Shown here piece after piece: positions 1-34,569 of a DNA stretch of 64,000 bases. The stretch comes from Mobula hypostoma (lineage: Eukaryota). Under the pieces are notes generated by a model. The model did not search any database. It saw nothing but the letters and a program-made list of their open reading frames with translations, and had not been told where the DNA came from. Each line of letters starts with the position of its first letter. The first letter of the stretch is position 1. The DNA is taken from contig NC_086124.1 in NCBI RefSeq assembly GCF_963921235.1, forward strand, positions 27,962,001-28,026,000. The letters are read 5' to 3'. Position numbers and translations under genes: made by a program.

Positions 1-383
1 GGTATGTTTCGTGCTATCATAGAGGTCAATTCGTATTCAAAAAAAGCATAGATATGGTGTCTTCGCAACTACACGTAAACTTAGGATTCTTGTGTCAGAG
101 ATGCATTGTTACAAATGAAACTGGGTTCACAGCTTTTAGGAAATGCATTGTTATGAATTCAATCTAAAGTACTTTGTCAAAGAGCAGAAGGCTGCTGGCT
201 GAAGTCATTTATTTAAGTGTAAATGAATCGTTTATCGTTTACTCTAACAATCGTGAGAATACGGTGAGCTCGGATGCCAATTTCACCAGACTGCAGTTTG
301 GAAGCATTTAGTGTGGGCGGGGCCCTCGAAGATGTGGGGCCGGTAGCATATGGTACTTTTGCTAGTAGGTTAATCCAGCCCTG
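1..383 (-). mobile_element. 5' end of a hAT-family DNA transposon (paralog of 33934-34319)
   Basis: The minus strand starts cagggctggattaacc at 383, a hAT-like terminus, abutting a CR1 fragment. In the paralog the same sequence leads into a hAT transposase pseudogene. Confidence 0.6.
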
Positions 384-610
384 TGTGCACTCTCTGGTTG
401 GAAACTCTCCTGAACAAATTTGACGAGCTCTATCCCATCTCATCCTTCTACAGTATGGGAGTCCCAGTGAATATGTGCAAAGTTAAAACCTTATGTTTCT
501 TGCAATAGCCTATGACCTCTCTACAGATTTGTTCCTCTGCATCCCTCGGACTGTTGGGTGGTCTGTAATATAGTCCTATTATCGTGGTCAGACCTTTCTC
601 ATTTCTCAGT
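384..610 (-). mobile_element. CR1 LINE endonuclease fragment
   Basis: Minus-strand translation LWVELRNEKGLTTIIGLYYRPPNS and DGIELVKFVQESF, typical of the CR1 ORF2 APE domain. Confidence 0.8.
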
Positions 611-619
611 TCCACCCAC

Positions 620-928
620 AACACCTCACCAGATGAGTTCTCCAGTGAAGCCAATCCCGAGACCGGCGAGTCGGCACCTGTCAGAGACTGCGCGTGCGCT
701 CGTCATCCGGCCGCCCGCCGCTGATTGGCTGCCGCGGCTTCCCGCCAGAGACCCCCCCCGCCCTCTCTCCGGCGCGTGACTCCGCCGGCGGCCGGGCTGC
801 TCCCTCGCTCTATTCGGCGTTGAGGAGCGGAGGAGCGGGGCTGGGACTGGGGCTGGGGCGGTACGTTGGGCGGGGAGGTTGCCTCCTCCTGCCTCCAGCC
901 GCTCTTTGCTTTTGGCACAGTCGCAACC
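620..928 (+). promoter_or_regulatory. CpG-island promoter, copy 1, with CRE half-site (cgtcatc 701-707) and inverted CCAAT/Y box (ctgattgg 721-728)
   Basis: Locally very GC- and CpG-rich in an AT-rich background. The motifs sit about 200 bp upstream of a Kozak ATG (accATGg, 929). The core is identical in the paralog at 34624-34684. Confidence 0.7.
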
Positions 929-1004
929 ATGGGTCGATATTGCACTGCCTGGGCGCTCCTCCTGCTCCTCGCCGCTCGTTTGGGGACTCGCAGCTCGGCG
1001 GCCG
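929..1004 (+). CDS. Signal-peptide (leader) exon, copy 1: MGRYCTAWALLLLLAARLGTRSSAA-G, phase-1 donor
   Basis: ATG at 929 in Kozak context, hydrophobic core, small residues at the cleavage site, and donor G|GTGAGT at 1004/1005. Seven nucleotide differences from the WA leader at 34893-34968. Confidence 0.8.
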
Positions 1005-1154
1005 GTGAGTCGATTCCTGTCGCGGGGATCACCGCGCTTGGTGCAGATTGTGGGATCCTGCACAGTTCGCATTGCTGGGGTCATCAACCGGGTCGGGGGT
1101 GGGGTGTTATGGGTTGGATCTTGTTGTTTAAGGGTTAAACTTCCTGGTAAGACC

Positions 1155-2127
1155 TGTCACGTATCCCGTGATGGGAATAAAGAACCAGCAGAAATAGAAA
1201 ACGCTTTGGAGTCCAGTATTACTATTCACTAGTAATATTTATTAGAAACTACTCAATACAGTAATATAAATGTAGATAAATCAAACAGGTTAGCAATGAT
1301 TATTTATGTAAATAAGTATATCAGTAAGTGTGGAGATATAGGTGAAAAACCAAGCTTCTTCAAGTCTAAGGGTAAAAAGATACTGTCTTACGATGATGAG
1401 TAAAGTTCAGTTCAGATCATGGTGTTCAGTTGAGTAGTGATGGAGAGAGAGGGAGGGAGAGAATTGGGTCTTCAGGTGAGCTGACACCGTTGATCTCCTC
1501 GTTGTCCTCCGAAATCCTTTAAAGTCACAGACTGTGACTTCAACAAAGGGGACCAGTTTTCTGTGGTGGAGCTATCACCCAGGCAAGGGTGGACACATGG
1601 CCAACTCCCCACCGGTCACTGCCTTTTCTTTTCACTGCAGGAGCCACTGATCGATCTGCCTGATCGATCCTCCAAAAACCCACTTTTTCTGCCGGCATTA
1701 CAAAGCTCATTCAGTGTCCAAAACACATGTCTGAGGTCTATATCATCTGACCTTCTATTTATCTCACTGTACTGAGTATCAACTGTTATTCAAGTTACTC
1801 CCCCTTCCCTTCTCTGTGTAAGAAATGCAAGCAGGCAAATGTCTTTGAGAAGTATCAACATGCTGCTGAAAAATCATAACATTGATTGTCCATCAAATAA
1901 GGCTGCCTTCAGTCACCATAGCAACTTACGAGCTGCTTGGTGCCATCTCCAACTCAGCAGAAATCCAAAAGTTAGCCAGTTCTTTCTCGTGCCTTAAAGT
2001 GACAGTCCAACAGTTAGTCTTTGTCTCTCTCTCTCTCTCTTTTCAAAACAACATGTCGGTGTTAAATAACTCTCTCTCTCTCTTTTCAAAAGCACAGTTT
2101 ATAGGGGTCATTCAGGACCCCATCACA
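1155..2127. mobile_element. Solo LTR (Gypsy-like), inserted into a CR1 fragment
   Basis: TG...CA termini (tgtcac...tcaca) flanked by a 4-bp TSD gacc (1151-1154, 2128-2131). It splits the CR1 motif ctggtaagacc/acacttggagtattg. Also present in copy 2. Confidence 0.8.
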
Positions 2128-2600
2128 GACCACACTTGGAGTATTGTGTTCAGTTCTGGTTGCCTCATTACAGAGCCACATTTAATATCAGGATATTTAA
2201 ATTGGGATGTAGAAGCTTTAGAGAGTATGCTGAGGAGATTTACCAGGATTAGAGAGCCTATCTTGTGAGGTTGAGCAAGCTAGGGATTTGCTCTTTGAAG
2301 CGAAGGAGCATGAGAGGTGACTGAACAAAGATGTACAAGATAAGAGGCATTGATAGGGTGGACAGTGGAAGACTTTGCCCCAGAGTGGCAATGGCTAACA
2401 TGAAGGGGCATAACTTTAAAGTGTTTAGAGGGGGAATGTCAGAGGTAGTATATTTAGGTGTGGAACCTGGCACTGCCAAGGTTGTCATAAGGACACTTAA
2501 GAGACTCTTATAGGCACAGAGGTGACAGAATACTGGAGGCTTCTGTGTGAGGGAAGGGTTTGATTGATCGAAGGGTTGGCACAACAATGTGGACTGAAGA
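2128..2600 (+). mobile_element. CR1 LINE 3' RT/tail fragment
   Basis: RPHLEYCVQFW-type and RRFTR motifs, degenerate. Confidence 0.8.
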
Positions 2601-2945
2601 GCTGGTACTGGTCTATGCACATGGTTGGTGGGATCTTGCTGTGGACACTCAGGGATGGGGAGGGAGGAGTTGTGTAGTGGGATCTTGCCGTGCACTTGTT
2701 GGGTGGGGGCTGTGCTATGGATTGAATGGGAATTTGTTTGATTGTGCCTTGCCCGTGTTGCATGAACGCTTACCACGTGTTGACTGGATGGGGATTGTTG
2801 TAGTGTTACAGACTTGTACAACACACAACTGGACCCCTTTGCCCACCGTGTGTTTGCTGACGTTTTTGCCCATCTCCGCTCATCCCTCCCTCCCCCCCAA
2901 CACACATTAGGACCATATCCTGATGTTAAAGGTACTTCGAATATA

Positions 2946-5900
2946 ATTACAAAATAGGCTGAAGGAACTAGAAAAAAAACACAAATTGAATTTGGCACAG
3001 GATACATTAGAGGAAATTTTAAAAATTAGGAATGAAATTAATAGTTTGGCCACACAAGAAATCAGGAAAAATTTAATGTTTCTGAAGCAGAGACATTATG
3101 AAAGTGGATCTAAATCTATGAAAATACTGGCATGGAAACTGAAAAAAAAATAGCAGAAAATACAATTCATAGAATTAGGGATCCAAGAACAAAAATAAAA
3201 AAATAAGGCAAGTGAAATTCAAGAAGCTTTTGAAGTGTTTTACAATACTCTACGTTCCAAAGTTCCAGGGGGAAGCATAACCCAAATGGACACCTTCCTG
3301 AATTCGCTAGTTATCCTCTTTAAGCGAAGAACAAAATAGAACGATGACTACTGACATAACTGAAGTTGAACTAAAAGCTGAAGTTAGTAGGCTTAAATTA
3401 AGCAAGTCACCAGGATCAGATGGGTATAAGGCAGAGTGGTATAAAGAATTAAAAAATGAGTTAATTCCTGTCTTACTCCCCACACTGAACTGGGCTCTAA
3501 AATAGGCACAAATGCCACCCAGCTGGAAGGAAATGATAATCCCAGCTATACCGAAAGAAGGCAAGGATAAAATGGAATGTGGGTCATTTAGACCAATATC
3601 CGTTCTGAATGTAGATCAGGGATCAGCAACCTTTTTGCCTCTGTGGGCCGGATCGCGTATTAATAAGCGGACGGTGGGCCAGATAAATGACATAAAAAAC
3701 TTGAAATATGGGAATTATCCATTTAAATACATCTAGTTATGTTTTGCCTCAAATTAATGAATAACGCATGCTAGAAAATCATTTGTGCTTAACCAAGGAT
3801 GCCAATTAGCAATCAAAGAACTCAGTTTGGTTCTTCTGTCCCACCATTGCTGGTGCCCCATCAGTTGTGATGCTAATTAGCTTCGACACGTTAAGTTTAA
3901 TTCTGACATCATTTTCAGCAAAGCTTCAAAATTGTCTGCCCCAGTAACTGTGTCCTTCATAGGAATTATTGAATAAATTCTTCAAAAATTTGAAAACTTG
4001 AGGTCACTCCTCGCACAAACACTGCAAGTTGAGCAGTGTCTCTCAAGTCTGTACTCTCATTATGCGCAATTGAAAAAAAAATGCAATTCGTTGCGGGCAT
4101 CCCTTTAACAACTTTTAACATCTGCTGACATTTCTTCAACTCGTCGTGTGATCATTCTTGCTGACACGCTGATAGATGCAAATAAAGATTTCTTTTCAGG
4201 ACGAACAATATCCACTACTGTCCGTAAACATTCATTGACAAACTCTCCATTTGTAAAAGGCTTAATCTTTTCTGCAGTATGTTTTGAGACTTCGTAGCTG
4301 GCATGGGTATTTCCTTCATTCTCACTGCTTTTTCAGCATTCAGCGTCTACCTTCCTGCGTTTTGCATTCATTTTGCAAGTATCTCAATATTTGCTCACGG
4401 CCGGTCAAAATACCTTTGAGGGCCGGATCTGGCCCACGGGCTGTAGGTTGCCTACCCCGATGTAGATTATAGATTATTTACCTCCATCATGGCCAAACGA
4501 TTAGAAGAGTTTCTACCCATACTGATACATAGGGATCAGACAGGATTTATGCAACAACGCTATACGGAAGACAATGAATGAAGGACACTTCACGTTATGG
4601 ATCATATGCAAAAAAATAAATTTGAAGCAATAGTGATAAGCGTGGACACTGAAAAGGCATTTGATGTGGTTAATTGGAATTTTCTTTACAGAGGTTTACA
4701 TAGATTTAGTTTCCATGACGCAGTATTAAAACTATACAGGCACTATATGACAATCCTACTGCTAGGATTAAAATCAATGGATATTTATCAAATAGTTTTA
4801 CCCTAGAAAGGGGTACAGACAGGGTCGTGCATGGTCACTGCTACCCTTTGCATTATATCTGGAACCATTAGCTCAATACATCAAACGAAATGAAGATATC
4901 AGGGGAATTACTAGTAAAGGGACAGAGCATAAATTGACCTGTTACCTGGATGACATTTTGATCTATCTAGGGCAACCAACATACTCTTTACCTAAATTGA
5001 TGCAATCCTTTGAACAATATGGTCAATTATCAGGATACAAGATCAACATAGATAAAACCCAATTACTTTCATATAACTATAGCCCACCAAGAGAAATTGG
5101 AAGTAGATATCCCTGGACATGGCAAATAGTCTTTCAAATATTTCGGCATCATTATGCCAAAAGATTTGGCAAAATTATCAGAATGCAATTATCAGTTTAT
5201 ATAAAAAATTAAGGAAGATATAACAAGAGGGAACCTAATTCCTTTTTTTAGTCTCAGTTCAAGGATTGAATCTATTAAAATGAATATACTGCCTAGACTA
5301 TTATATCTCTTTCAAACTCAATCAACAGAGATTAATCAAAATCAATTCAATGAATAGAACAAGATGTTATCAACATATATATGGTACGGTAAAAGGCCTA
5401 GATTTTGTCTCAAAACTTTGCAATTAGCCAAGGAAGGGGGGGGGATGGGGCCTACCTTCTCTTAGAGATTATTATTTTGCCGCACAGTTGAGAGCTGTGA
5501 TATGTTGGTGCAACCCATCATATGACACTCAATGGAAAAACATTGAGGAGGGGATACTTCCCATCCCCATGCAGGCAATTTTGGCTGATAACCTACAAAG
5601 GCACATAAATACTATTGATAACCCATGGGTGAAATGGACTCTTAAAATATGGAAAACTATTATAAAAGAATATAAACTAGAGGGAGATATTGCAATTCTT
5701 AAATGGTGTGCATATGACTTGGATTTTACGCCAAATACACTGGATGCTGGATTTAAGGACTGGACAGCTAAAGGAATAACAGTTCTTTGCAATATAATGA
5801 AAGAAGGAACACTGTTCAGTTTTGAAATGCTTAACAGAAACACATTAGAAAAACAAGACTTTTATCAGTATTGACAGATGCGACAGTATGTTAATAGGAT

Positions 5901-6854
5901 GGTTAAAAATGTAACCAAGGTAAGTACATGTTTGATAGAGCTATTTAGAAAAGCATATAATTCAGATAATGGTAGTAGAATCATTTCAAGAGTGTACAAG
6001 GATTTGTCAAATCTTAAAACACATATGACTTCATATATCAAAACAAAATGGGAGAAGGAAGGAGGGATAATTATATCTGAGGAAGAATGGACAATAATAT
6101 GGAGGTATCAATGGAAGTGTACCAGTTCACAGAAATGGAGGGAGTTCGGATGGAAAATCTTGATAAGATATTTTGTTACACCCTCTCAGATATCCTATTA
6201 TGATGGTAACCTCCCTGTTTGCTGGAGAAATCGTGGAAACCAAAATGCAAACCATTATCATATTTTCTGGGAATGCCCCGTTATCAAAGACTATTGGAGT
6301 GGGATACACAATGCCCTACGAGACATTTTTAAATTTTAAATACCCTTAGAAAGTAAGACCATATATTTTGGGTATATACCTCAAGAATAGTTGAAAAGAG
6401 ATAAATATTTAATGAATATACTGCTGGTGGCTGGTAAAAAGACTCTTACCAGTAAATGGTTATCACAGGAGAGCCCAACTTTAAACTCATGGATGGAAAT
6501 TACAATGAACATTTACAAAATGGAGAAGATACCAGCATCTGTTGGTCTTAAGTTGGAACAATTTGATTCATACTGGGAAAAAATGGTTTAACTACATTAC
6601 ACCTCATAGACCTGATTTTATTCTCACAGATCAATGAATATGTTGTAAAAAAAAGATCACTCCCTACTTGCACATAGTTTTCTCCTTTTGCTTGTTCTTC
6701 CTTTCCTCTCTTTTCTATAAGTGCATACCTCAGATGAATATTATGTGGAGATTTGTGGCATATATGACTATATAATATACAATATCTGAAATACACCTTA
6801 TGGTAATGTTTGTTTGATGATGAACTTCAATAAAAAATAAATTACAAAAAAAAA
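2946..6854 (+). mobile_element. 5'-truncated L1-clade LINE (ORF2 RT to C-terminus, decayed) with poly(A) tail
   Basis: RT motifs ([27 protein letters not shown]), C-terminal HIFWEC zinc motif, AATAAA plus poly(A) at 6828-6854. 14-bp TSD gtact(t/c)gaatata at 2932-2945 and 6855-6868. Empty site at 37678-37691 in the paralog. Confidence 0.92.
3617..4459 (-). mobile_element. Internally deleted hAT/Charlie element nested in the L1
   Basis: Termini cagggatcagcaacc / ggttgcctaccccg, perfect 8-bp TSD atgtagat (3609-3616, 4460-4467), transposase remnants on the minus strand. Confidence 0.85.
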
Positions 6855-9589
6855 GTACTTTGAATATACTATACTTCTACACTTTGCCCATTTACGTGTC
6901 TGTCCAAATACCTTTTAAATGTAGTGATTGTGCCTGTTTCCACAGCCTCCACTAACAGCTGATTCTAGTTATCAACGATTCTTTATATAAGAAAAAAGGT
7001 CTATCCCATTGGATCCCCTTTAAAGCTCCTTCCTTTCACCTGAACTCTGTGCCCTCTCTTTTTCATTGCTTGTGGATTGATTGGGATGTTGTTGTGTAAC
7101 TGTTGAGTGAGATCTTGCCATGTACAGAAGGTTGGACCTTGTCACAGAGTGGAATAGTGTATGTGCTTTGTGCATGTATATAAATGGGCGAGTTATTTCT
7201 AGCCGAGTCATTAGACGCACTACATAAAGAATAGGAAATTTTCTCAATATCCCAGGGCTAATACTTAGCCCACTATCAACATCCAAAACATATGCTTTTG
7301 GTCTCGATTTCCTGCCTGTTCTCTATAACTCATGACTCTGTATAGATCTCAAACATCTATCTTCGTCTTAATTATATTCAATGGCCCGAGCTTCTTAGCT
7401 TTCTACGCCTTGTATTTTCACTTGCTTCATTCATGAGTTCAAGTCTTTTGCCTCATTCAATATGAGAGGCTGATCAGTAAACACTCAATATGAAATCTAA
7501 TCATTTAACTCCAAGACCTGGGCCTCAATACCCCCTTGTGCAACACACCTACATGAAACGTTGCTGTAGAAAAGCAGCATGAATCAACAAAAACCCTCAC
7601 TGTCCCGGTCATGCTCTTTTCTCACTGCTGCCATCGGGTAGAAGGTACAGGGGCCTCAGGACTTGCGCCACCAGGTTCAAGAACAGTTAGTATCCCTCAA
7701 ACTTCAGGCTCTTGAACAAGAGGGGATAGCTACACTCACTTAAGGACTCTGTTATATTGTTATTTCATGCTCATTATTTATTGCTATTTATTTGTATCTG
7801 CATTTGCAGGATTTATTTACAGTTAACAGTTCCTGATGTTTGCAGTTGCTGTTCTATAGATTTGCCAAGTATGTCCACAGATGAGCTACAGCAGCAAAAG
7901 ATCACGAACATATACTGAGTGTCTATTTTATTCAGTACAGGAGATATCTAATAAAGTGGCCACTGAGTGTGAGTTGGTGTTTGTGTTTAATGTCCATACT
8001 CAAGGTCTGCTCTCCAGTTGCACTGGAATTCCTCACTATTGACCAAGACCTCACTCCTGTCAACATCATGTGGTAAATGATGTACAGGAGGCACTCCGCG
8101 TTAAAAATATTTACCATCTGAAGTAGCATGTCATTTTCAGCCTAAGAAGACATACTCATAAAAACATTGGTATAATGAAAGTAATTCTAGTATTCACAGT
8201 ACATTTATTATCACAGTGTATATACAGAAAACAATTCTGCAGGGTATAGCATTCTTTGCTGAAGCAACGCAGATTGCATAGATTGTCCTGATCAAACGAC
8301 TCAAAAATGGCTTTTTAAAAAAAAAAGTAACCAGTATCCAGGCACATATCCAATATGAACTGCAGAGTATTCCAAAATGAGTCTCCAATTGACCCTTGCA
8401 ATGTTGATCCCAAGACTCCTGCATTTCCCTCCGACAGCAGGTGGTGAGGGGGAGAGGAAAACCAATCATACACCGGCAGGTTGAATCAAGGTTGAATATC
8501 TGCTCGTCCTCGATGCTCATCCTCATTGACTTCAACCTTGCTGAATGCTTCAACTGGAGAAAAGCAATGGAGTTAGTCATGGGCTCGTACCCTTGATGCC
8601 TCAGTTGAAGAAAAGCAACAGTCTCGATCATGTTTCTAGGCCACACACTGTTCCAAACCTGACTGAATTTCCTTGGAGACAGCAAAGCACTAGATTGCTC
8701 AACCAGTCCAAAAACACACCATCAAAATGTAAATTATAGGTTCCAATGGCACGCCGATTAATAGTGGAACCTCACTTGGAAGATGATGAAGTAAAAGAAG
8801 CATATTTGTGAACTGTCAGCAGGACATTGTCGTTGTTCATGCTGTTCGCTGGGTCATCTTGTGTGAACTAAACTGGAATCATAACGTCACTGTTGTGAAA
8901 CACTTTATGATCCCTCTTGGGTTGTAAGAGATCTCCATTACAGCGCCAGCTGGCGAACTGGGTCTTCCTTTATTACTCAACTAGATTCAACTCCATGTCT
9001 TAAAGAGAGATTAGCTTTGTTTGTCATGTCGAACATACAGTTAAATGCGTCATTTCCATCAATGGCCAACACTGTCCAATGATGCGCTGGGGGGTTGGGT
9101 GGGGTCACACTTCCTGAGGCAACAGCTTACTCACAATTTACTAATCCTAACCCGTATGCCCTTGAGACACAGGACAGTGTTCAGGTACACCACAAGAAAC
9201 TGTTGGCTGTGTTTCTGGAAGTTAGAATGAGGGATGTTAATCCAGAGGGTGTGGAACAGTAAAATCTGGGGGTAACAACAGCTTAGGTGGGGGTTTTGCT
9301 AGGTGGAAGGCAGGGTGGAGTGAATGATGATCAGCTCGCGGACAGAGTTGGTTTTTGTGAGCATGCCACACATGTGATTTAAAATGTAGGGAGTTAACAA
9401 CAACATCAAGTCTACAAACTGGTTCAGGTTCTGATACTTGGAGACAGATAGAGTCAGTGTCTGAGACTGAGGAAGTGACGCGGACCAGCAGCAAAAAAAA
9501 AAACGAGTCCAGCTATTTGCTATGAATACACTAAGAAATGGTTTTCAGGGCTGTTTCAGGATTTAAGCTTCAGAATTTTATTTATTTAT

Positions 9590-10176
9590 TTATTGTGATA
9601 CAGCATGGAATAGGTCCTTCTGGCCCTTTGAGCCACACCACCCAGCAGTTCCCAATTTAATCTTAGCCTAATCACGAGACAATTTACGATGACCAATTAA
9701 CCTATCAATCGGTACATCTTTGGAATATGGGAGGAAACCCATGGGGCATGGGGAGAACATATAAACTTATAGGCAGTGGCAGGAATTGAACCCAAGTCAC
9801 CTGTACTATAAAGCATTGTGCTAACCACTACACTACTGTGCTACCCCATCTTGATCTTTAACAGTTCAGACCAGGAATTTGGTGAGCATTTTCATGAACT
9901 GTTTCCTCTCACAGACGGCATGGTAGTGCAACTCTTTACAGTGCCTGTGATTGAGGTTCATTTCCTGCTGCAGTCTTTATAGCATTTGTATGTTCTCCCT
10001 ATGACCCCATGGGTTCTCTCCCACATTCCAAAGACACACATTAGGGTTAGTAAGTTGTGGGTTGGCGATGGAAGCGTGCTGACACTTATGGCTGTCCTGC
10101 ATAATTCTCAGATTGTGGTAGTTGATACAAACGATGCACTTCATGGTATGTTTCAATGTACATGTGACAAATAAAA
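9590..10176. mobile_element. Head-to-head pair of tRNA-derived V-SINE/HE1-like SINEs (minus 9590-9848, plus 9917-10176)
   Basis: tRNA-like A/B boxes (gtagtgtagtggttagcac...gggttcaattcc), central ttctcccc...tcccacattccaaagac domain and tgtgacaaataaa tail. The same pair occurs at 40545-41133. Confidence 0.75.
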
Positions 10177-12266
10177 CTGATTTGCAATGAGATACAGAAC
10201 CTTTGAGTACAGTATTCGCAACCTGTTTTTATTCTGCATCCTAATGCAATGATACTCGCCCTGCTTTCTGCATTTTGCCCAAACATCTGTCTATCCTTCC
10301 TAATAATCTGACTGCATGCTACTTTTGTTGTTTTAACACCTTTCATATCCTGAGTCCCTTTACTCGGTTTCCCATCCCTGTGCTAAATTAGTGTCAACCC
10401 TCCCCAACAGCTCTAACAAACCAGCGTGAGAGAATATTTGTCCCTCTCAGGGTCATGTGCAATGTACAGGTCACCCCTCCTTGATTTGGATTTCTAGCAT
10501 CTGCAGATTCTTTTTTCCTGTTTGTGAAATGAATGTGCTTGACTATGGCCGTACCTTAGCAGCTTGAACTGAGAAAATATAAAAAAAATACGACCGTAAT
10601 AGTAAATAAGTAATAAATACCGAAAAGATGTGGTGAGGAAGTGAGGGGTTCTTGAAATCTTGTCACAGGTTGTGGTAACAGTTCAGTGAAGGGGTAAGTG
10701 AAGTTGTGAGGTTGTACCCTTTGGTTCAAGAGCCTTGTGCTTGGGGGGTAATTACTGTCCTGAACCTGATGGTATGAGTTTTGAGGGTCTTATACCTTCT
10801 TCCTGATGGCAGCAGCAAAAAGAGAGCATGACCTGGGTGATGGTTTGCCTGGGGAAGGATGCTGCTTTCTTGCGACAGCACACAGTGTTGATGTGCTCAA
10901 TGGAGAAAACAGTTTTATTCCTGATGGACTTGGCCATATATACTGCTTTTTGTAGGAATCTCCCTTTAAGGATATTGGTGTTCCTTGCCAGAACGTAATG
11001 CATTCAGTTATTATGCGTTCCACCACACAAGGATAGAAATTTGCTGAAGTTTCAGATTTGATGCAAGGAATGCATCGGTCAGGACTGCATTCTTTGCAGG
11101 TGGAAGATTGAGGCAAGATTTGATGGAAGTGTAACCCTCAGATTCAGTCGGCGACGTAAGTCGAGGGAAGACAATCTCTGGCCCCGCCAAATGTGTGAAC
11201 TTTGAGGTGCAAAACCTCTTGTTTGTGTGGATGCTGTGTGGTTCTCCTGTTACAAATCAGTACCACAGAATAATGGACTGTACACCATAGGCAATTAAAT
11301 GATTTAGCTGTTTGATTCTTAATTTGACTAAAGGGTTAGTAAAGAAAAACAAAAAGAAAAGAGCCCATTTTAATGAAACAGTCTAATGTGTGCAAGTTGG
11401 AGTTCACGGTTTCCCTCCTGCTGGTCCTCCATCGATTTCCCTGGCCGTCGTCGACTTCTGGCCCCACTCCAAGGCCACTGCTTTCTGGTGTCTACGAACT
11501 CTTCTTTCTGGCATCTTCTCTCTCCATCTTTTGCCGATAACAAAGCCCAGATTACCTCGGTGGCAGGCATACAGCATGAAAACACACTCTCCTCATTGGA
11601 CGGCCAACATCTCTAACCATAACCCAAACACTGCTTCTACAGAAAGACCATGACATTAGCAGTGAAACTTTTCCCAGGGTGTTACTCTTTCCCCACCCTC
11701 CCCCCACCAAATTTAGTGATGTCCTCATGACATTGAGATAATGTACCAACCCTGCGTGCAAAGAACAAAGTTCATCCCAGGTGTAAAAGGCAGTGACATA
11801 GATCCTCTGAATGATCTCCTCACTCTCCCGTACAAGCTGAAGTTCTTGCAGCTGCTGCTCCCGATCCATAGCACAGTCTTGCAGTATCTGCAGCTGGATG
11901 CACCTCACGCACATGTAGTCGCCCAAGGGGCTCCCAAGACTCCAACATCAGGAGTGAATAACCCACAAAGGCCTTTTAAACTATAGTAAGTATGTCTGAC
12001 ACAACAAGAAGAAAGAGAAACATAACAAACTCAGACAGACAAGTTACCCAGAGCCAGTGCCTCTTCTGTGCCGACGACTCCTTTGAGCCAGTGCTTGACA
12101 ATCTACTTCCTCCTGTAGCCCGTCCCAACAATCAGCGCTCCAACAATGCTGGCTCCGCTTGTGCAAGCATTCACATGTTGTGTTATGGCCAGGAGCCTGG
12201 AATTGAACATACCTGTAAGCGAAACTCTGAAAAATATAATAATTTCTTCTTTGAATGTCATTCCAG

Positions 12267-12581
12267 AGCCCAATATCAGGCTGGTAGGCGGCAGCGATCG
12301 TTGTTCCGGGAGAGTGGAGGTGTGGCACAGTGCACAGTGGGGAACGGTATGCGACGATGGATGGGGCACTGACGACGCCAAGGTTGTCTGCAGTCAGTTG
12401 GGTTGTCCCCCTGCCGCAGTAGCAATACAGGGGGCACACTTCGGGCAAGGCAGCGGGAATATCTGGATGGATGATGTTGCGTGCAATGGAAAGGAATCCA
12501 CCCTTGAGGAATGTTCCTTTGGAGGGTGGGGCATTCATAACTGCAATCACGGAGAGGATGCGGGAGTGAATTGTACAGAAG
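12267..12581 (+). CDS. Group-B scavenger receptor cysteine-rich (SRCR) domain exon 1 (CD163/DMBT1/WC1-type)
   Basis: Acceptor ttccag| at 12266 and donor G|GTAGGC at 12581. 315 nt, phase 1-1, open frame: [46 protein letters not shown]...[26 protein letters not shown]...[13 protein letters not shown]. Eight Cys in one exon defines group B. Confidence 0.95.
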
Positions 12582-12999
12582 GTAGGCATAGAAGAAAGAA
12601 CCTCTTTGTTTCTGCTTTCTCTCTGTTGGGATTAACAAAGACTCTATTTTTATAATTAGACCAGCCACTCTAGTTGCTGTGGGTAAAATGATGAGAACTT
12701 ATGTACTGATGCTTGACGTTTTTGAGGCAGGCATAACTTAATTAACATTTTTTCTGCGTCACTTAAAATGCTGGAGTGTTTCATTTGGCAAATTTTTATG
12801 TTCTGGTTGGTCGTGCATACAGGTGCTGATTCCAGCTTCATATAGGATAAGACGTATCAGATCAGAAAATATAAGGAATGACCGGTAATAAATCTGTATG
12901 CAAAACAGTGAATTGTAACTATTTATTAACAGCATTTAGTTCGTTTTCTGAGGTTCACGTAGGAACTCTATTTCATAAACTACGTGTAAACCTTCAGGG

Positions 13000-14004
13000 C
13001 AGGGGTGGCCAATGTTTCAGATTGCATGCGTCATTTTTTTCAGGCATGAGTTCAGGTGCGCCATACAACTCTTGTACCCCCATTCAATTCTTGTAAAAAT
13101 ATGTTAATATAGACATATTTAGCATTTTTACATGATATATTGATTTAATATAAAACAAGATAAACATTACTTACCTTAATGAGACTTTTAACAAATATAT
13201 TTTGTCTTCTTTTGATTTCTTCCTTTTTCTTAATCACATAGTCTTTCCGTAACTCAGACCAAAGCACTAGCTTCAGTTTTCCTTCGATTTCAGTCTGATG
13301 TTGTGTTTTATAGTGTCTATTAAGATCATGTCTTCTATTGTGTGAGGAAGTGTTTTCACAAACAATGCACAACAATTTTCCTGATGAATCCGCTATAAAT
13401 AAGAACTCATTTCCCCTCTGTTCATTGAATTCACACTTACTATCACTTTCTGCTTTTCTTTTGCACTGTGATGGGTCACTGAATGTAAAAACAAAACTTA
13501 GTTTTCGAAAAAGTACACAATTGCAAATGTTCACGAAGGACGAACAAAGCATAACGTCGTAGCACATGAGTGTCAATTGTAAACTGACTGGCAAAAACCT
13601 GCGACCCACCGCTGGTGCAGACGCCTGGCGTCTCAAGATCAAACAAGTATCAAACATTTATTGAACAGTTATGGAACAACTGCAGAACAAAAGTCCTTCT
13701 TTTCTAGTTTGACTCATTGAACATTTTTTTAAAATTGAAAACAGATTAATGTGAAAGAAGATAACATTTGCCAAAAGATGTGCACGAAATAATAAAATAG
13801 CTAAAAATAATTGCTATGTTTTAGGTTTATTCTCATTGAAACCCATTTCTAGATCTAAGCTACTTGAATTCCTGTTATAGTTTTTTTTTCTACAAATCAG
13901 TTTTTAGTTAACACTTTTTGCATGAGTAGGCTTACTTTTTTATAATTATCACTGGGGTGCAATGCACCACTTTTGGTGCATGCGCTGTCGGTTGGCCATC
14001 CCTG
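13000..14004 (-). mobile_element. Deleted hAT/Charlie-type element with BED zinc-finger remnant
   Basis: TIRs caggggtggccaa / ttggccatccctg, 8-bp TSD ctt(c/t)aggg. The minus-strand ORF carries LLCIVCE...DLNRHYKTQH. Empty site near 17450 in the second SRCR unit. Confidence 0.85.
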
Positions 14005-14639
14005 CTTTAGGGTGTTCTGCACAAGAACTCCCAAGTCCCTTTGCATCTCAGATGTTTCGATTTTACTCTGTTTAGAAAATAGTCTGCAGAATTATTTCTA
14101 CTGATGAAGTGCAAGACCATGCATTTTCCAACATTGTATCTAATTTGTTGTTTCCATGCCCATACTCCCAAACTGTCTAAGTCCATCTGAATTCACTCTC
14201 TTTTGAGTTCTATTACCAACCTAATTTTCCCAGTCTACCTGCATATTAAAATTTCCCCTTACTATCATAACATTTCCCTTTTGGTACACCATTTCTATTT
14301 CTGTTGTATTCTGCAGCCTACATTCCAGTTACTGTTTGGGGAGCTGCATATACTGCCATCAGGGTCCATTTCCATTGCAGTTTCATTATTGAACTGACAA
14401 GGATACAACATCTTCCGATCCTATGTCATACCTTTCCCAGTATTTGATGCCATTCTCTAACAGCAGAGCGATGACACGCCCCCAACCTATGTTCATACCC
14501 TTTCGATACAATGTACAATGGAAATTCAGCTACCCACCAAACAACCTTTCAGCAACAAATCGGTGATGTCCACAAGATCGTATGTGACAATTTGTAAAAG
14601 CGCCGTGTTGTTGTGCTCAATAGACGTTGAGAACAGTAT

Positions 14640-15470
14640 TGTAACCTATAGACAATAACCTATCCCTCAACGTCAGCAAGACGAAGGAATTGGTTGTTGA
14701 CTTCAGAAGGAGTAGTGGACCGCACAACCCAATTTACATCGGTGATGCGCAAGTGGAACAGGTCAAAAGCTTTAAGTTCCTCGGGGTCAATGTCACAAGT
14801 GACCTGACCTGGTCCAACCAAGTCGAGTTCACTGCCAGGAAGGCCCACCAGTGCCTTTACTTCCTGAGAAAACCGAGGAAATTTGGCCTGTCCCCTAAAA
14901 ACCTCACTAATTTTTATAGATGCACCGTAGAAAGCTTTCTTCTAGGGTGCATCACAACCTGGTATGGAAGTTGTCCTGTCCAAGACCGAAAGAAGCTGCA
15001 GAAGATTGTGAACATGGCAGAGAAACCAATCTTCTGTCCTTGGACTCACTTCACACTACACGCTGTCAGAGCTGTGCTACTGGAATAATCAAGGACACGA
15101 CCCACCCAGCCAACACAGTTTTCGTCCCTCTTCCCTCCGGGAGAAGGCTCAGGAGCTTGAAGACTCGTACGGCCAGATTTGGGAACAGCTTCTTTCCAAC
15201 TGTGATAAGACTGCTGAACAGATCCTGACCTGGATCTGGGCCGTACCCTCCAAATATCCGGACCTGCCTCTCGTTTTTTTTTGTACTACCTCACTTTCCA
15301 TTTTTCTATTTTCTATTTATGATTTATAAATTAATTTTTTAATATTTACTAATTTTTACTATTTTTAATATTTAATATTTGTAATCCAGGGAGTGGGAAG
15401 CGCAGAATCAAATATCGCTGTGATGATTGTACATTCTAGTATCAATTGTTTGGAGACAATAAAGTATAAA
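14640..15470 (+). mobile_element. L2/Rex-Babar-type LINE 3' fragment
   Basis: KTKELVVDFRR...VEQVKSFKFLGV...LYFLRK...FYRCTVES and RFGNSFFPTVIRLLN, followed by an A/T-rich tail. Confidence 0.8.
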
Positions 15471-15479
15471 GTAACCATT

Positions 15480-16490
15480 TTTGATTCTGCATCCCTAATG
15501 CACTGATATTCACTCTGCTAGTAGCTTTTTTTTGTTCGATCATCTGCCCGCCTTTCCTACCAGACTGACTGCACGCTATCTTTGCTGTTTTACCATCCGC
15601 GCTGTCCTGACCGCATTCCCTTTAGTTTCCACCCCCCTGCAAAATTAGTTTGAACCCTCCCCAATAGCTCTAAGAAACCAGTGTGCGAGAATGTTGTTGG
15701 CTTCAGTTGCAACCCTTCCCTTCTGTACAGGTCATGCTTCCCGTAGAAGAGATCTGAATGATCCAAGAACCTGAAGCACTTCACTCCCAGCTCCAAATTC
15801 TCAGCCATGCATGTATCTGCCAAATCATTCTGTTTCTACCGTCTGTGGCGCGTGACGCAAGAAACAATCCTGAATGTGTTGCGTCTCGGCATTTTGTCCG
15901 GCTCTTTAAATCCTCATTGCGGAACCTCTTTGTACCAAGATTTCAGGCTGCTCTCCCTCCCACTGCACAATGCTATGGATGCGATCCGAGTCCATAGCAC
16001 CTGGGAGGGAGCAACAGACCATCCGTGTGTCCCGTTTACGTCAACAAACTTTTTTTTCGATTACTCTGACTATTGAGTCCCCCATCTCAACCGCTCCCGA
16101 CTCTCCCTCTTTCCCTTCTGCAATGCATTGTCAGTGCAACCCACCTGGTCTCCGTGGCATTCTCCTGAGAGGTTATTTCAAAAAATAGTATCCAAAATGA
16201 TATACTTATTATTCAGGGAATTTACCCAAGAGCTGCTGTGAGCTCACTGTCTACTCACCATCTAATTCCTTCCCCTGACAGTCACTCAGTTATCAGACTC
16301 CTGCAGCTCTGATGGATGATCTCCTCACTCTCCCGTAGAAGCCGAAGGTCTTGCAGCTGCTGCTCCCGATCCATAGCACGGTTTTGCAGTATCTGCAGCT
16401 GGACGCACCTCACATACTTGTAGTTGCCCGTGGGGCTCCCAAGACTTCAACATCCAACGCGAATAACACGCAAAGGCCTTCTAAACTACA
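15480..16490 (-). mobile_element. CR1 ORF1/ORF2-junction remnant forming the SRCR intron; paralogous copies at 20210-21220 and partly at 10200-10480 and 11740-11990
   Basis: Minus-strand CR1 ORF1 coiled-coil-like text (CVRCIQLQILQD...EQQLQELQLVRESEEII), repeated in each SRCR unit. Confidence 0.65.
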
Positions 16491-16729
16491 CTAAATACCC
16501 CCCTCAAGTTACCCAGAGCCAGTGCCTCTTCTGTGCTGAAGACTCCTTTGAGCCAATGCCTGGCAATCCACTTTTACCACTGGCCTATCCCAACAGTCAG
16601 TGCTGCAACAATGGTGGCTCCGCTTGTGCAAACATTGACATGCTGTGTAATGGATAGGAATGCGGAACAGAACATACCTGAAGCGAAACTCCAAAAAATA
16701 CAGTAATTTCTCTTTCAATGTCATTACAG

Positions 16730-17044
16730 TGCCCGAAATAAGGCTGGTAGGCGGCAGCGATTGTTGTTCAGGGAGAGTGGAGGTGCGGTACAATGCACAG
16801 TGGGGAACGATATGCGACGATGGATGGGGCACTGAAGACGCCAAGGTTGTCTGCAATGAGTTGGGTTGTCCCTCTGCTGCAGCAGCAATACCGGGAGCAC
16901 ACTTCGGGCAAGGCAGCGGGAATATCTGGATGGATGATGTTGCGTGCAATGGAAAGGAATCCGCCCTTTGGGAATGTTCCTTCCGAGGATGGGGGAGTCA
17001 TAACTGCGGTCACAGAGAGGATGCAGGAGTGATTTGTTCAGAAG
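16730..17044 (+). CDS. Group-B SRCR domain exon 2
   Basis: Acceptor tcattacag| at 16729 and donor G|GTAGGC at 17044. 315 nt, phase 1-1, open frame, about 90% nt identity to exon 1. The eight canonical Cys are present plus one extra (DCCSG). Confidence 0.95.
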
Positions 17045-19125
17045 GTAGGCATAGAACAAAGAACCTCTTTGTTTCTGCTTTCTCTCTGTTGGGATTAACA
17101 AAGTCTCTATATTTTAGTAATTAGGCCAGCCACTCTAGTTGCTGTGGGTGAAACGATGAGAATTTTTGTACTGATGCTTGACGTTGTTGGGCAGGCACAA
17201 CTTAATTAACATTTGTTCTGTGTTGCTTAAAGTGCTGGAGTGTGTCATTTGGCAAATTTTTATGTTCTAGTTGGTCGTGCATACAGGTGCTGATTCCAGA
17301 TTCATATAGGGTTAGAGGTATCAGAGCAGAAAGTATTAGGAATGACCGGTAATAAATCTGTATGCATTGAATTGTAACTATTTGTTAACGGCATTTCGTT
17401 AGCTTTCTGGGGTTCAGGTAGGAACTCCATTTCATAAACTGCATATAAACCTTTAAGGTGCTCTGCAGAAGAACTTCCAAGTCCCTTTGCATCTCAGATG
17501 TTTCGATTTCACTCTGTTTAGAAAATAGTCTGCAGAATTATTTCTACTGATGAAGTGCAAGACCATGCATTTTCCAACATTGTACTGAATTTGCCGTTTC
17601 CATGCCCATACTCCAAAACTGTCTGAGTCCTTCTGAATTCACACTCTTTTCAGTTCTATTACCAACCTAATTTTCCCAATCTACCTGCATGTTAAAATTT
17701 CCCCTTACTATCATAACATTTCCCTGTTGGTACGCCATTTCTATTTCTGTTGTATTCTGCAGCCTACATTCCAGTTACTGTTTGGGGAGCTGCATATACT
17801 GCCATCAGGGTCTTTTTCCATTGCAGTTTTGTTACTCAATCGACAAAAATTCAATATCTTCCAATCCTATGTCACATCTTTCTCAGTATTTGATACCATT
17901 GTCTAACAGCAGAGCGATGCAGCGCCCTCAGCCTATGTCCATCCCCTTTCAATACAATGTACAATGGAAATTCAGCTACCCACCAAACAATCTTTCAGCA
18001 ACGAATCGGTGATGTCCACAAGTTCATACATGACAATTTGTAAAAGTGCAGTAAGATCATCTAGCTTATTTCTTGTATTCTGTTGAATGAGATCTAAGGC
18101 TTTGAGTATAGTGCTTGCAACCTTTTTTTATTCTGCAGCCTAATGCACTGGTAATATACTCACCCTGCTGGCTGCATTTTGTCCGATCATGTAGTTGCCC
18201 TTCCTAACAGTCTGACTGCCTGCTACTTTTGTTGTTTTAACACCCTTCATATCCTGAGTCCCTTCACTCAGTTTCCTATCCCCATGCTAAGTTAGTTTCG
18301 ACCCTCCCCAACAGCTCTAACAAGCCAGCCCGAGAGAATATTTGCCCATCTCGGTGTCAAGTGCAACCCCTCCCTTTTGTACAGGTCATCTCTCCTCCAT
18401 TTGGATTCCAGCATCCGCAAATTTTCTCCTGTTTGTGAAACGAATGTGCTTGGCTATGGCCGTACCTTAGGATATACCAGCTTGATCTCAGAAAATATAA
18501 AAATTCTACAATAATAGTAAATAAGTAATAAATACTGAAAATATGGGGTGAGGAGGTGAGGAGTCCTTGAAATCATGTCCGCAGGTCGTGGCAACAGTTC
18601 AGTGAAGGGGCAAGTTTTAACATTAAAACCTGACGCAGTGTGAAATCTCTTGCTGCTGATTTGTTTCTAAATCCCCTCACACATAACGTACAGAAACCGA
18701 TTAGTGAAAAGCACCAGAAATATGGTGAATTAAAAGGAATTCAAAGACTATGTAAGATGAGGAGGGTATTCGTTGTACGAACAGAAACATGTACAACTGG
18801 TACCATCCCAATGTCACTATATAATAGCATTATATATTTTGACAGACAGCAATAATAATGCAAATCTGCAGAAAGCCAAAAGTTCAAATAGGACTAGAAT
18901 AGCGCAAAAATTCTTAGCAATTGAAAAATGAGTATACTTAACTCTGCCAGTACCTCAGGTTTTACCAGCTTGTCCTGAGATATTAGTTTAAATAATAATA
19001 ATAATTATCAGGTCGCTAGATAGACAGATGGGTGTTTTGTTAAGTGGGTGAAATTAAAAAATATATTGTAAATAAAGGAAGAAATAAATAAATTAATAAA
19101 AATCTGATTGATAAAGAAATAAATA

Positions 19126-19279
19126 CAGGTTGACCTTCACTAATCCGACTACCTGTAATCTGGTTCCTTCGATAATCCGGCACTGATTATGCTTAATGTG
19201 ATCCTTCTGTAATTCGGCATTTTCACTAATCCGGCACTCCTCAGGTCCCAATGGTGCGGGATTAGTGAAGGCCGACCTG
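19126..19279. mobile_element. Tc1/mariner (pogo/Tigger-like) MITE
   Basis: TIRs caggttgaccttcactaatccg / cgggattagtgaaggccgacctg flanked by TA dinucleotides (19124-25, 19280-81). Confidence 0.85.
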
Positions 19280-20189
19280 TACTTATTTTGAGACATGAGT
19301 TGCAGCATCCATGGAAGTGATTCCATAGTTTGGGTTCAGATTCACAATTCCTGAACAACTATCGGAGTATGTACTGTGACATGACCGGATAACCCTATTA
19401 ATTGTGTGCACCAGGCTTGTCCTGCGGTTTCAGGCGATGATATGAAGAGAAAATTCTGTTCTAACTATCGGCAGTCTGAGACAGCTGCCAATGATCAGGT
19501 TAGGGCCCTGATATGGGTGCTGACAATATCTTCAGAATTTCGATAGCAAAGTCCAACATCTCAGTCCAGAAAACCGTTTGTGAATTCAATCATAAGATAT
19601 GATGGCTTATAACTGCTTTACGTAAACCCAAGTTTGGCGTTAAAGATTACGGGAAGAAGGCAAGGGAATGTAGTTCAAAGTGAGAATATATCATCTATGA
19701 TGAGTTGCACAGTAGATTAAATGGCCATACTGGCTTAATTATTCTCCTGTTTCTGATTGACGTTTGCCCGAAGATAAAGCCCATAAGTCGCTCGCTGTCT
19801 GGGTGGTGAGAATTGAGCATTCTGTGGTTTCCAGTGACCCAGATTCAGTATTAAATCCGGAACAACGAATTACAGTTATTGGCATGTTTGCTGCTCGTCC
19901 TTATTGTTGTTGACATGACAACATACAGAGACAAATTTCTTCGTCATGTTAGAGCACAATATCCCTTTATACGACTACATTCGCTGGCTGACGAAAGGCG
20001 TGTGTGTAGGTGATTCTACTGTACCGCATGTGATGTGGGTTATGATACTATTGCCTTGTATGTGGACTGCTGTCAGCACAACAACTTATCACGTTCCTGT
20101 GGAGGGAGAGCAGAACTGGGATATTCACTGACATCTGTCTCTGAAGGCGTGATCATGTGTAAGCACACTCTACTCTTATACTTTATAAG

Positions 20190-34319: not shown

Positions 34320-34569
34320 TGTGCTCTCTGTCTTTGGAAACTCTCCTGAACAAATTTGACGAGCTCTATCCCATCTCATCCTTTTACAGTATGGGAGTCC
34401 CAGTGAATATGTGCCAAGTTAAAACCATCTACCTTATGTTTCTTGCAATAGCCTGTGATCTCTCTACAGATTTATTCCCCTGCATCCCTCGGACTGTTGG
34501 GTGGTCTGTAATATAGTCCCATTATTGTGTTCATACCTTTCTTATTTCTCAGTTCCACCCACAACACCT

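What the first reader, a model, noticed from the sequence alone, without database searches (positions are those of the whole stretch)
620..17124. Chimeric gene: a duplicated MHC W-alpha promoter and leader exon fused to SRCR exons
Seen in the sequence: the promoter, leader exon and about 6 kb of intron 1 of the WA gene are duplicated. The downstream copy continues into MHC alpha1/alpha2/TM exons. The upstream copy switches abruptly at about 10176 into an SRCR repeat array with two intact 8-Cys exons. The leader donor (phase 1) joins SRCR1 in frame (gcc g|ag ccc). The private L1 in this copy has already decayed, yet the leader and both SRCR exons keep open frames and canonical splice sites. Inference: exon shuffling placed a pattern-recognition SRCR module under an MHC-type promoter. 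I know of no description of such a gene, but cannot search.
Basis: partly seen in the sequence, partly recalled or inferred. Interest (0 to 1): 0.88.

Follow-up and report, generated by a model that had tools for sequence, protein, structure and literature searches.

The report
MHC-W leader fused to SRCR exons
In this devil-ray locus the promoter and signal-peptide exon of a W-category MHC alpha gene sit in front of two scavenger-receptor (SRCR) exons, and related manta and devil-ray genomes carry annotated genes with the same join, so the chimera is a real gene type, though whether this short copy is expressed is unproven.

Summary
Observation confirmed. Window 1-10183 is a copy (84-91% identity) of 33934-41139: the CpG-island promoter, leader exon and 5' part of intron 1 of an intact WA_DS10-like MHC gene. 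At about 10180 the upstream copy switches sharply into a fragment of a 4.5-kb-unit SRCR array, which ends at 21395. The fragment holds two intact 315-nt, phase 1-1 SRCR exons.

The chimeric-gene reading has outside support. Spliced in silico, leader + SRCR1 + SRCR2 + a mini-exon at 20468-20511 gives a 249-aa ORF. It is colinear from Met1, at about 91% identity, with RefSeq XP_072102772.1 (Mobula birostris, 251 aa) and with the N-terminus of XP_062891224.1 (M. hypostoma, 2164 aa, 20 SRCR domains). Both show the predicted join SSAA|EPNIRLVGG. In both species a minus-strand C1-set gene starts about 7.8 kb upstream of the leader, which is the WA position of a head-to-head WA/WB pair.

Not shown: splicing or expression of this copy. 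RNA contigs show a related leader spliced at the same donor and SRCR-to-SRCR joins. They differ from the window by 3-4% and fit the long-array relative. This copy is truncated and carries about 2.5 times more private amino-acid changes.

Verdict: a real chimeric gene family. This copy is either a short secreted form or a decaying duplicate. Other first-stage notes already flagged this stretch.

The parts
1..10180 (+). Upstream copy of the WA 5' region: flank, CpG-island promoter, leader exon and 5' part of intron 1
   Evidence: Self-BLAST against 33934-41139 at 84-91% identity; alignment
640..928 (+). CpG-island promoter and 5'UTR, with an inverted CCAAT (Y-box-like) CTGATTGG at 721-728
   Evidence: GC 0.71 and CpG o/e 0.90. 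The wider 620-1100 stretch has 50 CpG, against 44 in the downstream copy. A 62-nt perfect block at 682-744 is shared by both copies
929..1004 (+). Leader (signal-peptide) exon coding part, 25 codons plus 1 base, donor GT at 1005
   Evidence: It matches 22/25 residues of the first 25 of XP_062891224.1. A 206-nt RNA contig of run X1 aligns to 843-1004 and stops exactly at the donor
2949..6855 (+). LINE insertion private to the upstream copy, reading frame broken
   Evidence: Absent from the downstream copy; RVT_1 fragment and split ORFs
10180..10203 (.). Breakpoint joining WA intron 1 to an SRCR-array intron
   Evidence: Three-way alignment: WA homology ends near 10180 and SRCR-unit homology follows, with no shared repeat
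10182..21395 (+). Fragment of a tandem SRCR unit array, about 2.4 units, broken at both ends
   Evidence: Internal repeats of 4.5-4.7 kb; homology ends at 21395, about 60 bp before the expected third exon
12267..12581 (+). SRCR exon 1 (group B type, 8 Cys, phase 1-1)
   Evidence: Pfam PF00530 E = 6e-34; splice sites
16730..17044 (+). SRCR exon 2 (8 Cys plus an extra Cys at residue 11, phase 1-1)
   Evidence: Pfam PF00530 E = 9e-36; splice sites
20468..20511 (+). Candidate terminal mini-exon (...GHASPRSDLNNPRT, stop TGA at 20509-20511), homologous to the C-terminal tail of XP_072102772.1
   Evidence: tblastn of the tail; good acceptor and in-frame stop. No AATAAA or ATTAAA follows within 2 kb
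33934..41139 (+). Downstream copy of the same 5' region, continuing into the intact WA gene
34893..46340 (+). Intact WA_DS10-like gene of 261 codons: leader 34893-34968, alpha1 42485-42739, alpha2 44350-44631, CP/TM/CY 46168-46340
   Evidence: C1-set Pfam hit; residue-level match to DS10 rows of the W-category paper's datasets

Best explanation
This is a genuine chimeric locus belonging to a devil-ray/manta gene type. In that type the 5' end of a W-category MHC alpha gene (CpG-island promoter, 5'UTR, signal-peptide exon and first part of intron 1, in the WA position of a WA/WB pair) has been joined to group-B SRCR exons of a DMBT1-like array. The join is a non-homologous break inside intron 1.

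The WA leader ends in phase 1 and every SRCR exon is phase 1-1. Splicing therefore puts the MHC signal peptide directly on SRCR domains and yields a secreted SRCR protein. The signal peptide is cleaved off, so the only MHC contribution is where and when the gene is expressed.

In M. hypostoma the gene carries 20 SRCR domains. The copy in this window is cut after the second SRCR exon. Its largest product would be a secreted two-SRCR protein of about 249 aa, like the 251-aa RefSeq model of M. birostris.

Shown here:
- the anatomy of the locus;
- the colinear annotated homologues;
- the head-to-head C1-set neighbour in the relatives.

Inferred:
- that this copy is transcribed and spliced that way (my estimate is about 45%);
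- that WA was the donor of the 5' end;
- any ligand-binding role.
For: - Duplication, breakpoint and exon anatomy.
- The in-silico spliced ORF of 249 aa is open to a stop. It aligns from Met1 with XP_072102772.1 (91.1% over 235 aa) and XP_062891224.1 (90.6%), with the identical join SSAA|EPNIRLVGG.
- XP_062891224.1 has 20 SRCR domains. It has isoforms X1-X4, three of which start with the leader.
- In both relatives a minus-strand C1-set gene starts about 7.8 kb upstream of the leader. This matches the head-to-head WA/WB layout described in PMC8713811.
- The CpG island of the upstream copy is undecayed: 50 CpG, o/e 0.91. Twelve sites keep CpG here where the other copy has TG/CA, against 6 the other way.
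- RNA contigs: a leader 96% like this one stops exactly at donor 1004. SRCR coverage is exon-shaped, with zero depth in the flanking intron.
- The breakpoint lies in the middle of an SRCR unit, about 1 kb past an exon position. This shows the SRCR array was truncated at its 5' side. A separate M. birostris SRCR-array gene has a different leader, MTYLL....
Against: - No read or contig shows 1004>12267 or 12581>16730 for this copy.
- The RNA contigs differ from the window by 3-5 letters per 117. They carry V15 in the leader, like the M. hypostoma protein. They show SRCR-to-SRCR joins (12579>12265, 17044>16731) that this two-exon copy cannot make. They therefore most likely come from the long-array relative.
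- The array is broken at 21395 and no poly(A) signal follows the candidate last exon.
- dN/dS is 0.78 between the SRCR exons and 1.0 between the leaders.
- This copy has 14 private amino-acid changes against 5 and 6 in the two relatives, including an unpaired Cys in SRCR2.
- Promoter conservation is not exceptional compared with the intron.
- The RefSeq models are automatic predictions whose evidence I could not inspect.
Confidence: 0.6

Rival explanations
1. Dead partial duplicate. Segmental duplication in the W-gene cluster copied the 5' end of the long-array chimeric gene (leader plus the first two SRCR units) and truncated it. The copy is silent or makes no useful product, and its frames are open only because it is young or is repaired by gene conversion.
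For: - The array is broken at both ends.
- dN/dS is near 1.
- Private changes run 2.5 times higher than in the relatives, and SRCR2 has an extra Cys.
- No exact-match RNA contigs were found.
- Under neutrality all exons stay intact with 6-14% probability at 2-3% divergence.
- Mosaic divergence of 2.5% at 1260-2220 against 7-16% elsewhere suggests gene conversion.
- Other W genes of this cluster were judged pseudogenes by earlier follow-ups.
Against: - Four consecutive coding pieces, all splice sites and the stop are intact.
- The CpG island shows no methylation decay.
- A two-SRCR model of the same length is annotated in M. birostris.
Confidence: 0.3
2. Read-through fusion. Transcripts from the upstream promoter splice leader > SRCR1 > SRCR2 > WA alpha1 > alpha2 > TM, giving a W-alpha chain with two N-terminal SRCR domains.
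For: All exons are phase 1, so the chain is in frame. In M. birostris a 2637-aa model next to XP_072102775.1 combines SRCR domains with a C1-set domain. An earlier first-stage note proposed this reading.
Against: - It needs a 25-kb intron that skips an intact promoter and leader and several sense-strand LINEs.
- No RNA evidence exists.
- The M. birostris model could not be read and may be an ab initio chain.
- The M. hypostoma gene ends in its own acidic tail, not in WA exons.
Confidence: 0.05
3. Reverse history. The MGRY leader and its promoter are native to the SRCR gene, and the WA gene acquired them.
For: Leader sequences of shark and skate WA_DS10 could not be recovered from the paper's supplement, where the OCR was empty. 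The WA origin of the leader therefore rests on position only.
Against: - The break lies inside an SRCR unit, so the array lost its own 5' end.
- The leader sits head-to-head with a C1-set gene in two species, the usual WA place.
- Another SRCR-array gene on the same chromosome has a different leader.
Confidence: 0.1
4. Assembly mis-join at about 10.2 kb in a highly duplicated region.
For: The region is rich in paralogous copies. I could not lay DNA reads across the junction.
Against: The junction has no shared repeat on which an assembler could switch. Two independent assemblies of related species place the same leader upstream of the same SRCR exons in one gene model.
Confidence: 0.03

Closest known systems
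RefSeq predicted proteins XP_062891224.1 (Mobula hypostoma 'DMBT1-like' isoform X1, 2164 aa) and XP_072102772.1 (Mobula birostris 'M130-like', 251 aa)
   Same: Same leader type. Identical leader-to-SRCR1 join. Same order of an SRCR1-type then an SRCR2-type domain. The M. birostris model has the same short tail exon. About 91% identity from Met1.
   Different: The window copy is not identical to either. It has 14 private changes, and its array stops after two exons. M. hypostoma has 20 SRCR domains and an acidic C-terminal tail that is absent from the window. The models carry automatic names, and I found no paper noting their MHC-type 5' end.
DMBT1 / gp340 / SSC5D-type secreted multi-SRCR proteins
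   Same: Tandem group-B SRCR domains, each on its own phase 1-1 exon, with a secreted product. The best distant hits are DMBT1-like proteins.
   Different: Pfam finds no SID spacers, CUB or ZP domains here or in the M. hypostoma protein. The domains abut directly, and the 5' exon comes from an MHC-W gene.
FCRLS (Fc receptor-like scavenger; PMC7940838)
   Same: A precedent for an immune-gene chimera made by joining Ig-superfamily receptor gene parts to a type-B SRCR exon from a neighbouring gene (abstract).
   Different: FCRLS keeps Ig domains in the protein. Here only the promoter and the cleaved signal peptide come from the MHC gene, so the chimera is regulatory and not a new domain combination. 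The families and lineages are unrelated.
W-category MHC alpha chain, WA_DS10 lineage (Okamura et al. 2021, PMC8713811)
   Same: The downstream gene of the window is one. It shares its promoter, leader and 6 kb of intron 1 with the chimera.
   Different: The chimera has no alpha1, alpha2 or TM exons. It is not an MHC molecule.

Membership tests
SRCR superfamily, group B domain | Match to the SRCR domain profile over its full length | tested here: met
   PF00530 E = 6e-34 and 9e-36, profile positions 1-100 of 100
SRCR superfamily, group B domain | Eight conserved cysteines, with the whole domain on one exon (criterion from my own knowledge of the family) | tested here: met
   SRCR1 has 8 Cys; SRCR2 has 8 plus one extra. 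Each is a single 315-nt phase 1-1 exon
DMBT1 orthologue | SRCR domains separated by SIDs, followed by CUB and ZP domains (criterion from my own knowledge) | tested here: not met
   Pfam finds only SRCR in the window exons and in P0393 and P0390. The domains abut directly
Mobula WA-leader/SRCR chimeric gene (XP_062891224.1, XP_072102772.1) | MGRY...SSAA leader joined directly to EPNIRLVGG of an SRCR1-type domain, followed by an SRCR2-type domain | tested here: met
   In-silico splice of 929-1004, 12267-12581 and 16730-17044 aligns from residue 1 at 90.6-91.1%
Mobula WA-leader/SRCR chimeric gene (XP_062891224.1, XP_072102772.1) | The join is made in RNA at this locus | tested here: inconclusive
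   One X1 contig stops at donor 1004 with 29 unlaid letters that were not displayed. It differs from the window by 7 letters and a 14-nt insertion. No 12581>16730 joint was listed
Mobula WA-leader/SRCR chimeric gene (XP_062891224.1, XP_072102772.1) | Head-to-head C1-set (WB-like) gene upstream of the leader | not testable with these tools
Seen in both relatives. The window starts only 928 nt before the ATG.
W-category MHC alpha chain (for the donor gene at 34893-46340) | Class II-type exon plan: leader, alpha1, C1-set alpha2, CP/TM/CY | tested here: met
   Four phase-1 exons giving 261 codons; C1-set E = 6e-19
W-category MHC alpha chain (for the donor gene at 34893-46340) | Trp at position 61 of alpha2 (beta2m-like) and no Trp at Ig position 37 (F/L instead), per PMC8713811 | tested here: met
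   alpha2 reads ...SFGKDWRFQVL... and ...VIVTLQKN..., with L where class II has W. Criteria. I placed the positions by eye against the paper's DS10 rows
W-category MHC alpha chain (for the donor gene at 34893-46340) | Closest to a named WA lineage | tested here: met
   alpha1, alpha2 and TM closely match the little skate and houndshark DS10 rows, e.g. FFxTDDPSLP, LYSEKP, CFVSGFFPPA, SQxxVLICGxIIGILG. This was a comparison by eye, not a tree

The most novel reading that the evidence does not exclude
Devil rays and mantas have put a secreted multi-SRCR pattern-recognition gene under the promoter of a W-category MHC alpha gene. That promoter sits back-to-back with a WB gene and carries an X-box-like / CRE-like / Y-box arrangement. 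An innate binder would then be switched on by the same programme as this little-understood MHC class. The short two-SRCR copy in this window would be a separately expressed member.
Probability: 0.2. Interest if true: 0.7.

Novelty: new variant of a known kind. Interest (0 to 1): 0.5.

Why it matters
This is a clean natural case of promoter and signal-exon capture. Phase-1 compatibility let an MHC gene's 5' end drive a scavenger-receptor array, and the arrangement is kept in at least two or three mobulid genomes. If the shared promoter works as in the WA/WB pair, the SRCR gene is a ready-made reporter of how W-category MHC genes are regulated, a topic that the founding paper does not mention at all (the word 'promoter' has no occurrence in it). 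It also shows that the RefSeq names 'DMBT1-like' and 'M130-like' hide a lineage-specific chimera. Several models in this region start at an intronic ATG or end in cryptic mini-exons. For this window alone the stakes are smaller, because the copy may be a decaying duplicate.

Tried and rejected
- Leader peptide search in the 5.8-billion protein set, limited to 57-182 aa: nothing found.
- Search of 1.84 billion cluster representatives with SRCR1: 33,424 hits, but none above 69% identity and none with the leader or WA exons.
- Exact look-up of an ORF spanning the 10180 junction, to find independent contigs: not on record.
- Test for selective conservation of the promoter: the 62-nt perfect block is not exceptional, since the intron has perfect runs of 58-89 nt. 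I dropped it as evidence.
- Open frames as proof of selection: rejected after the simulation.
- Recovering shark and skate WA_DS10 leader peptides from the paper's supplement: panels A-C were lost in OCR.
- DNA of the Mobula loci: the files were too large and only gene tables came back. No shared-breakpoint test or lineage dN/dS was therefore possible.
- The 2637-aa M. birostris SRCR + C1-set model could not be retrieved.
- The P0001 model (start MARS..., tail EAEGLAAAATDP) turned out to use an intronic ATG and a cryptic exon that recur in every array unit. I do not count it as evidence of gene structure.


Full report
**1. What is in the sequence**

A self-comparison of the window shows that 1-10183 is a second copy of 33934-41139, in five colinear blocks of 84-91% identity. 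The upstream copy has a private 3.9-kb insertion (2949-6855). It contains reverse-transcriptase fragments in several frames, so it is a broken LINE. The downstream copy has a private 0.7-kb piece. The match begins at window base 1, so the duplication may be longer than the window shows.

Both copies contain a GC-rich promoter with an inverted CCAAT box (CTGATTGG at 721-728). Both also contain a 76-nt coding leader that ends in a GTGAGT donor in phase 1.

The downstream copy runs on into alpha1 (42485-42739), a C1-set alpha2 (44350-44631) and a CP/TM/CY exon (46168-46340). All are phase 1 and together give 261 codons. Its alpha2 has the beta2m-like Trp (KDW) and Leu in place of the Ig-core Trp. 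These are the two hallmarks named in PMC8713811. Its alpha1, alpha2 and TM closely match the little-skate and houndshark WA_DS10 rows of that paper's datasets. It is therefore a WA_DS10-like gene.

**2. The junction and the SRCR fragment**

A three-way alignment shows WA-intron homology ending at about 10180. Homology to an SRCR array unit starts immediately after. The two parents share no repeat at that point. This fits a non-homologous break and gives an assembler nothing to switch on.

The stretch 10182-21395 is about 2.4 units of a 4.5-4.7-kb tandem repeat. It is broken about 1 kb downstream of an exon position on the left. On the right it is broken about 60 bp upstream of the third exon.

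It holds exactly two SRCR exons, 12267-12581 and 16730-17044. Each is 315 nt with AG/GT borders and phase 1-1. Pfam SRCR gives E = 1e-34 to 1e-35.

**3. Tests for selection within the window**

These tests are weak or negative.
- The two SRCR exons differ by 32 nt and 20 aa, with dN/dS 0.78. Their flanks differ by 10-17%.
- The two leaders give dN/dS 1.0.
- The promoter's 62-nt perfect block is matched by longer perfect runs in the intron. Divergence is mosaic: about 2.5% at 1260-2220 and 7-16% elsewhere, which suggests gene conversion.
- A neutral simulation keeps the leader and both exons intact in 14%, 6% and 1% of trials at 2%, 3% and 4.5% divergence.

One positive sign remains. The CpG island of the upstream copy is as good as that of the working WA gene (50 against 44 CpG, o/e 0.91 against 0.86). 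At 12 sites it keeps CpG where the other copy has TG/CA, against 6 the other way. This suggests it has stayed unmethylated in the germ line.

**4. RNA**

Four small runs of 'organism A', kept as Logan contigs, were laid on 12000-17500.
- Coverage is exon-shaped on both SRCR exons, with zero depth in the adjoining intron.
- Every contig differs from the window by 3-5 letters per 117.
- The joins seen are SRCR-to-SRCR 'goes back 315' (12579>12265, and 17044 > A > 16731).
- No 12581>16730 join was listed.

These transcripts come from a longer, closely related array.

Laid on 640-1500, run X1 has one 206-nt contig on 843-1004.
- It carries 7 mismatches and a 14-nt insertion.
- Its alignment stops exactly at the donor, and 29 more letters were not displayed.
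- Its 972 C>T changes codon 15 from Ala to Val.

Depth is zero in the promoter and in the first 130 nt of the intron, so this is not DNA carry-over. A leader of this type is therefore transcribed and spliced at this donor. The contig is not this copy's exact sequence, and its splice partner is unknown to me.

**5. Related proteins: the decisive evidence**

The first search found XP_072102775.1 of Mobula birostris (P0001). It has two SRCR domains orthologous one-to-one to the window's. However, it starts at an in-frame intronic ATG (MARS...) and ends in a cryptic exon found in every array unit.

Searching with an alignment led by a long protein lifted the length filter. Cluster look-up followed. 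Together they returned:
- XP_062891224.1, -226.1 and -227.1 of M. hypostoma ('DMBT1-like' isoforms X1, X3 and X4; X1 is 2164 aa with 20 SRCR domains);
- XP_072102772.1 of M. birostris (251 aa).

All of these begin with an MGRY...SSAA leader followed directly by [21 protein letters not shown]....

The window's in-silico product aligns from Met1 at 90.6% and 91.1% over 235 aa. The 18-aa tail of the M. birostris model (KGHASPRR...) has a homologue at 20468-20511 with a good acceptor and an in-frame TGA. The window can thus encode a 249-aa protein colinear with that model. No AATAAA or ATTAAA follows that exon within 2 kb. One lies 307 nt after the SRCR2 donor, where read-through would add 26 residues.

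**6. Context in the relatives**

Only gene tables were available, not DNA.
- The M. birostris gene spans 47 kb. It is followed after 1154 bp by a 2393-aa SRCR model, so the array continues there.
- The M. hypostoma gene spans 128 kb.
- In both species a minus-strand gene with a C1-set domain starts about 7.8 kb upstream of the leader. This is the head-to-head WA/WB layout that PMC8713811 reports for sharks, teleosts and coelacanth.

An earlier first-stage note on the preceding window calls the exon at 929-1010 'divergently transcribed'. That fits, but I could not read that DNA. These results make an assembly artefact very unlikely. They also favour WA as the donor of the 5' end. Two further points agree with this. 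The break cuts an SRCR unit in mid-intron. Another SRCR-array gene on the same M. birostris chromosome has a different leader, MTYLL....

**7. Status of this copy**

Against the two relatives it has 14 private amino-acid changes, where they have 5 and 6. These include three in the 25-residue leader and an Arg-to-Cys change that leaves an odd cysteine in SRCR2. It is therefore either an older paralogue, the orthologue in a more distant mobulid, or a copy under relaxed constraint.

Earlier follow-ups on this genome describe a large W-gene cluster in a devil ray with several pseudogenes. Another SRCR array lies 3.78 Mb upstream and may be the long-array gene of this genome.

My estimates:
- about 0.8 that the WA-leader/SRCR gene type is real and expressed in mobulids;
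- about 0.45 that this particular copy is transcribed and spliced as predicted;
- about 0.3 that it is a silent relic.

**8. Mechanism**

The MHC part contributes regulation and a cleavable signal peptide only. The mature product would be two (here) or twenty (M. hypostoma) abutting group-B SRCR domains. That makes it a secreted DMBT1- or SSC5D-like binder, though without SID, CUB or ZP parts.

The promoter stretch CCTGTCAGAGACTG ... CGTCA ... (15 nt) ... CTGATTGG resembles the X1/X2/Y order of class II promoters as I recall it. That is a lead from memory, not a test.

**9. Novelty**

I found no paper describing such a chimera. FCRLS (PMC7940838) is the nearest published analogue of an SRCR exon joined to an Ig-family immune gene. 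The proteins themselves are already in RefSeq under automatic names. What is new is the recognition of their MHC-W 5' end. I rate it a new variant of a known kind, with interest 0.5.

Noticed in passing
window 34893-46340 (+) and 46168-64000 (-): An intact WA_DS10-like gene of 261 codons. On the opposite strand, tail-to-tail, lie a C1-set exon (within 62915-63517) and a TM-like ORF (60975-61229), presumably WB.
   Followed up: partly
window 12185-12266, 16651-16729; P0001, P0391, P0288: An in-frame ATG (MARS.../MAPLVQ...) lies just upstream of SRCR exons in each array unit. RefSeq models of M. birostris, M. hypostoma and Hemitrygon akajei use it as the start codon. These are probably annotation artefacts that lack a signal peptide.
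   Followed up: partly
window 15731-15775, 20468-20511; 16338-16376, 21064-21102: Every array unit carries two cryptic mini-exons with in-frame stops (GHAS...PRT* and EAEGLAAAA.DP*). The M. birostris gene models use them as last exons. In the third unit the acceptor of the second one is changed from TAG to TAC.
   Followed up: partly
window 1260-2220 vs 35250-36218: The duplicated intron is only about 2.5% diverged here, against 7-16% in neighbouring blocks. This looks like a gene-conversion patch between the two WA 5' copies.
   Followed up: partly
window SRCR exons vs P0390, P0393, P0391, P0001: Both window SRCR exons share Gly33 and Lys75, where all four Mobula proteins have Asp/Ser33 and Asn75 in both domains. 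This points to concerted evolution within arrays.
   Followed up: partly
window 32860-33600 (-): A 247-aa open frame with no Pfam match lies just upstream of the downstream WA 5' copy. It may be transposon-derived.
   Followed up: no
M. birostris GCA_030028105.1, gene next to XP_072102775.1: A 2637-aa model combines many SRCR domains with a C1-set domain. It is either a predicted read-through into a W gene or a real SRCR-Ig fusion. The sequence was not retrievable.
   Followed up: no
window 927-975, runs X2 and X8: RNA contigs (depth 44 and 24) match the leader coding part but have a different 5'UTR. This is a third expressed leader variant, presumably from another W-cluster gene.
   Followed up: no
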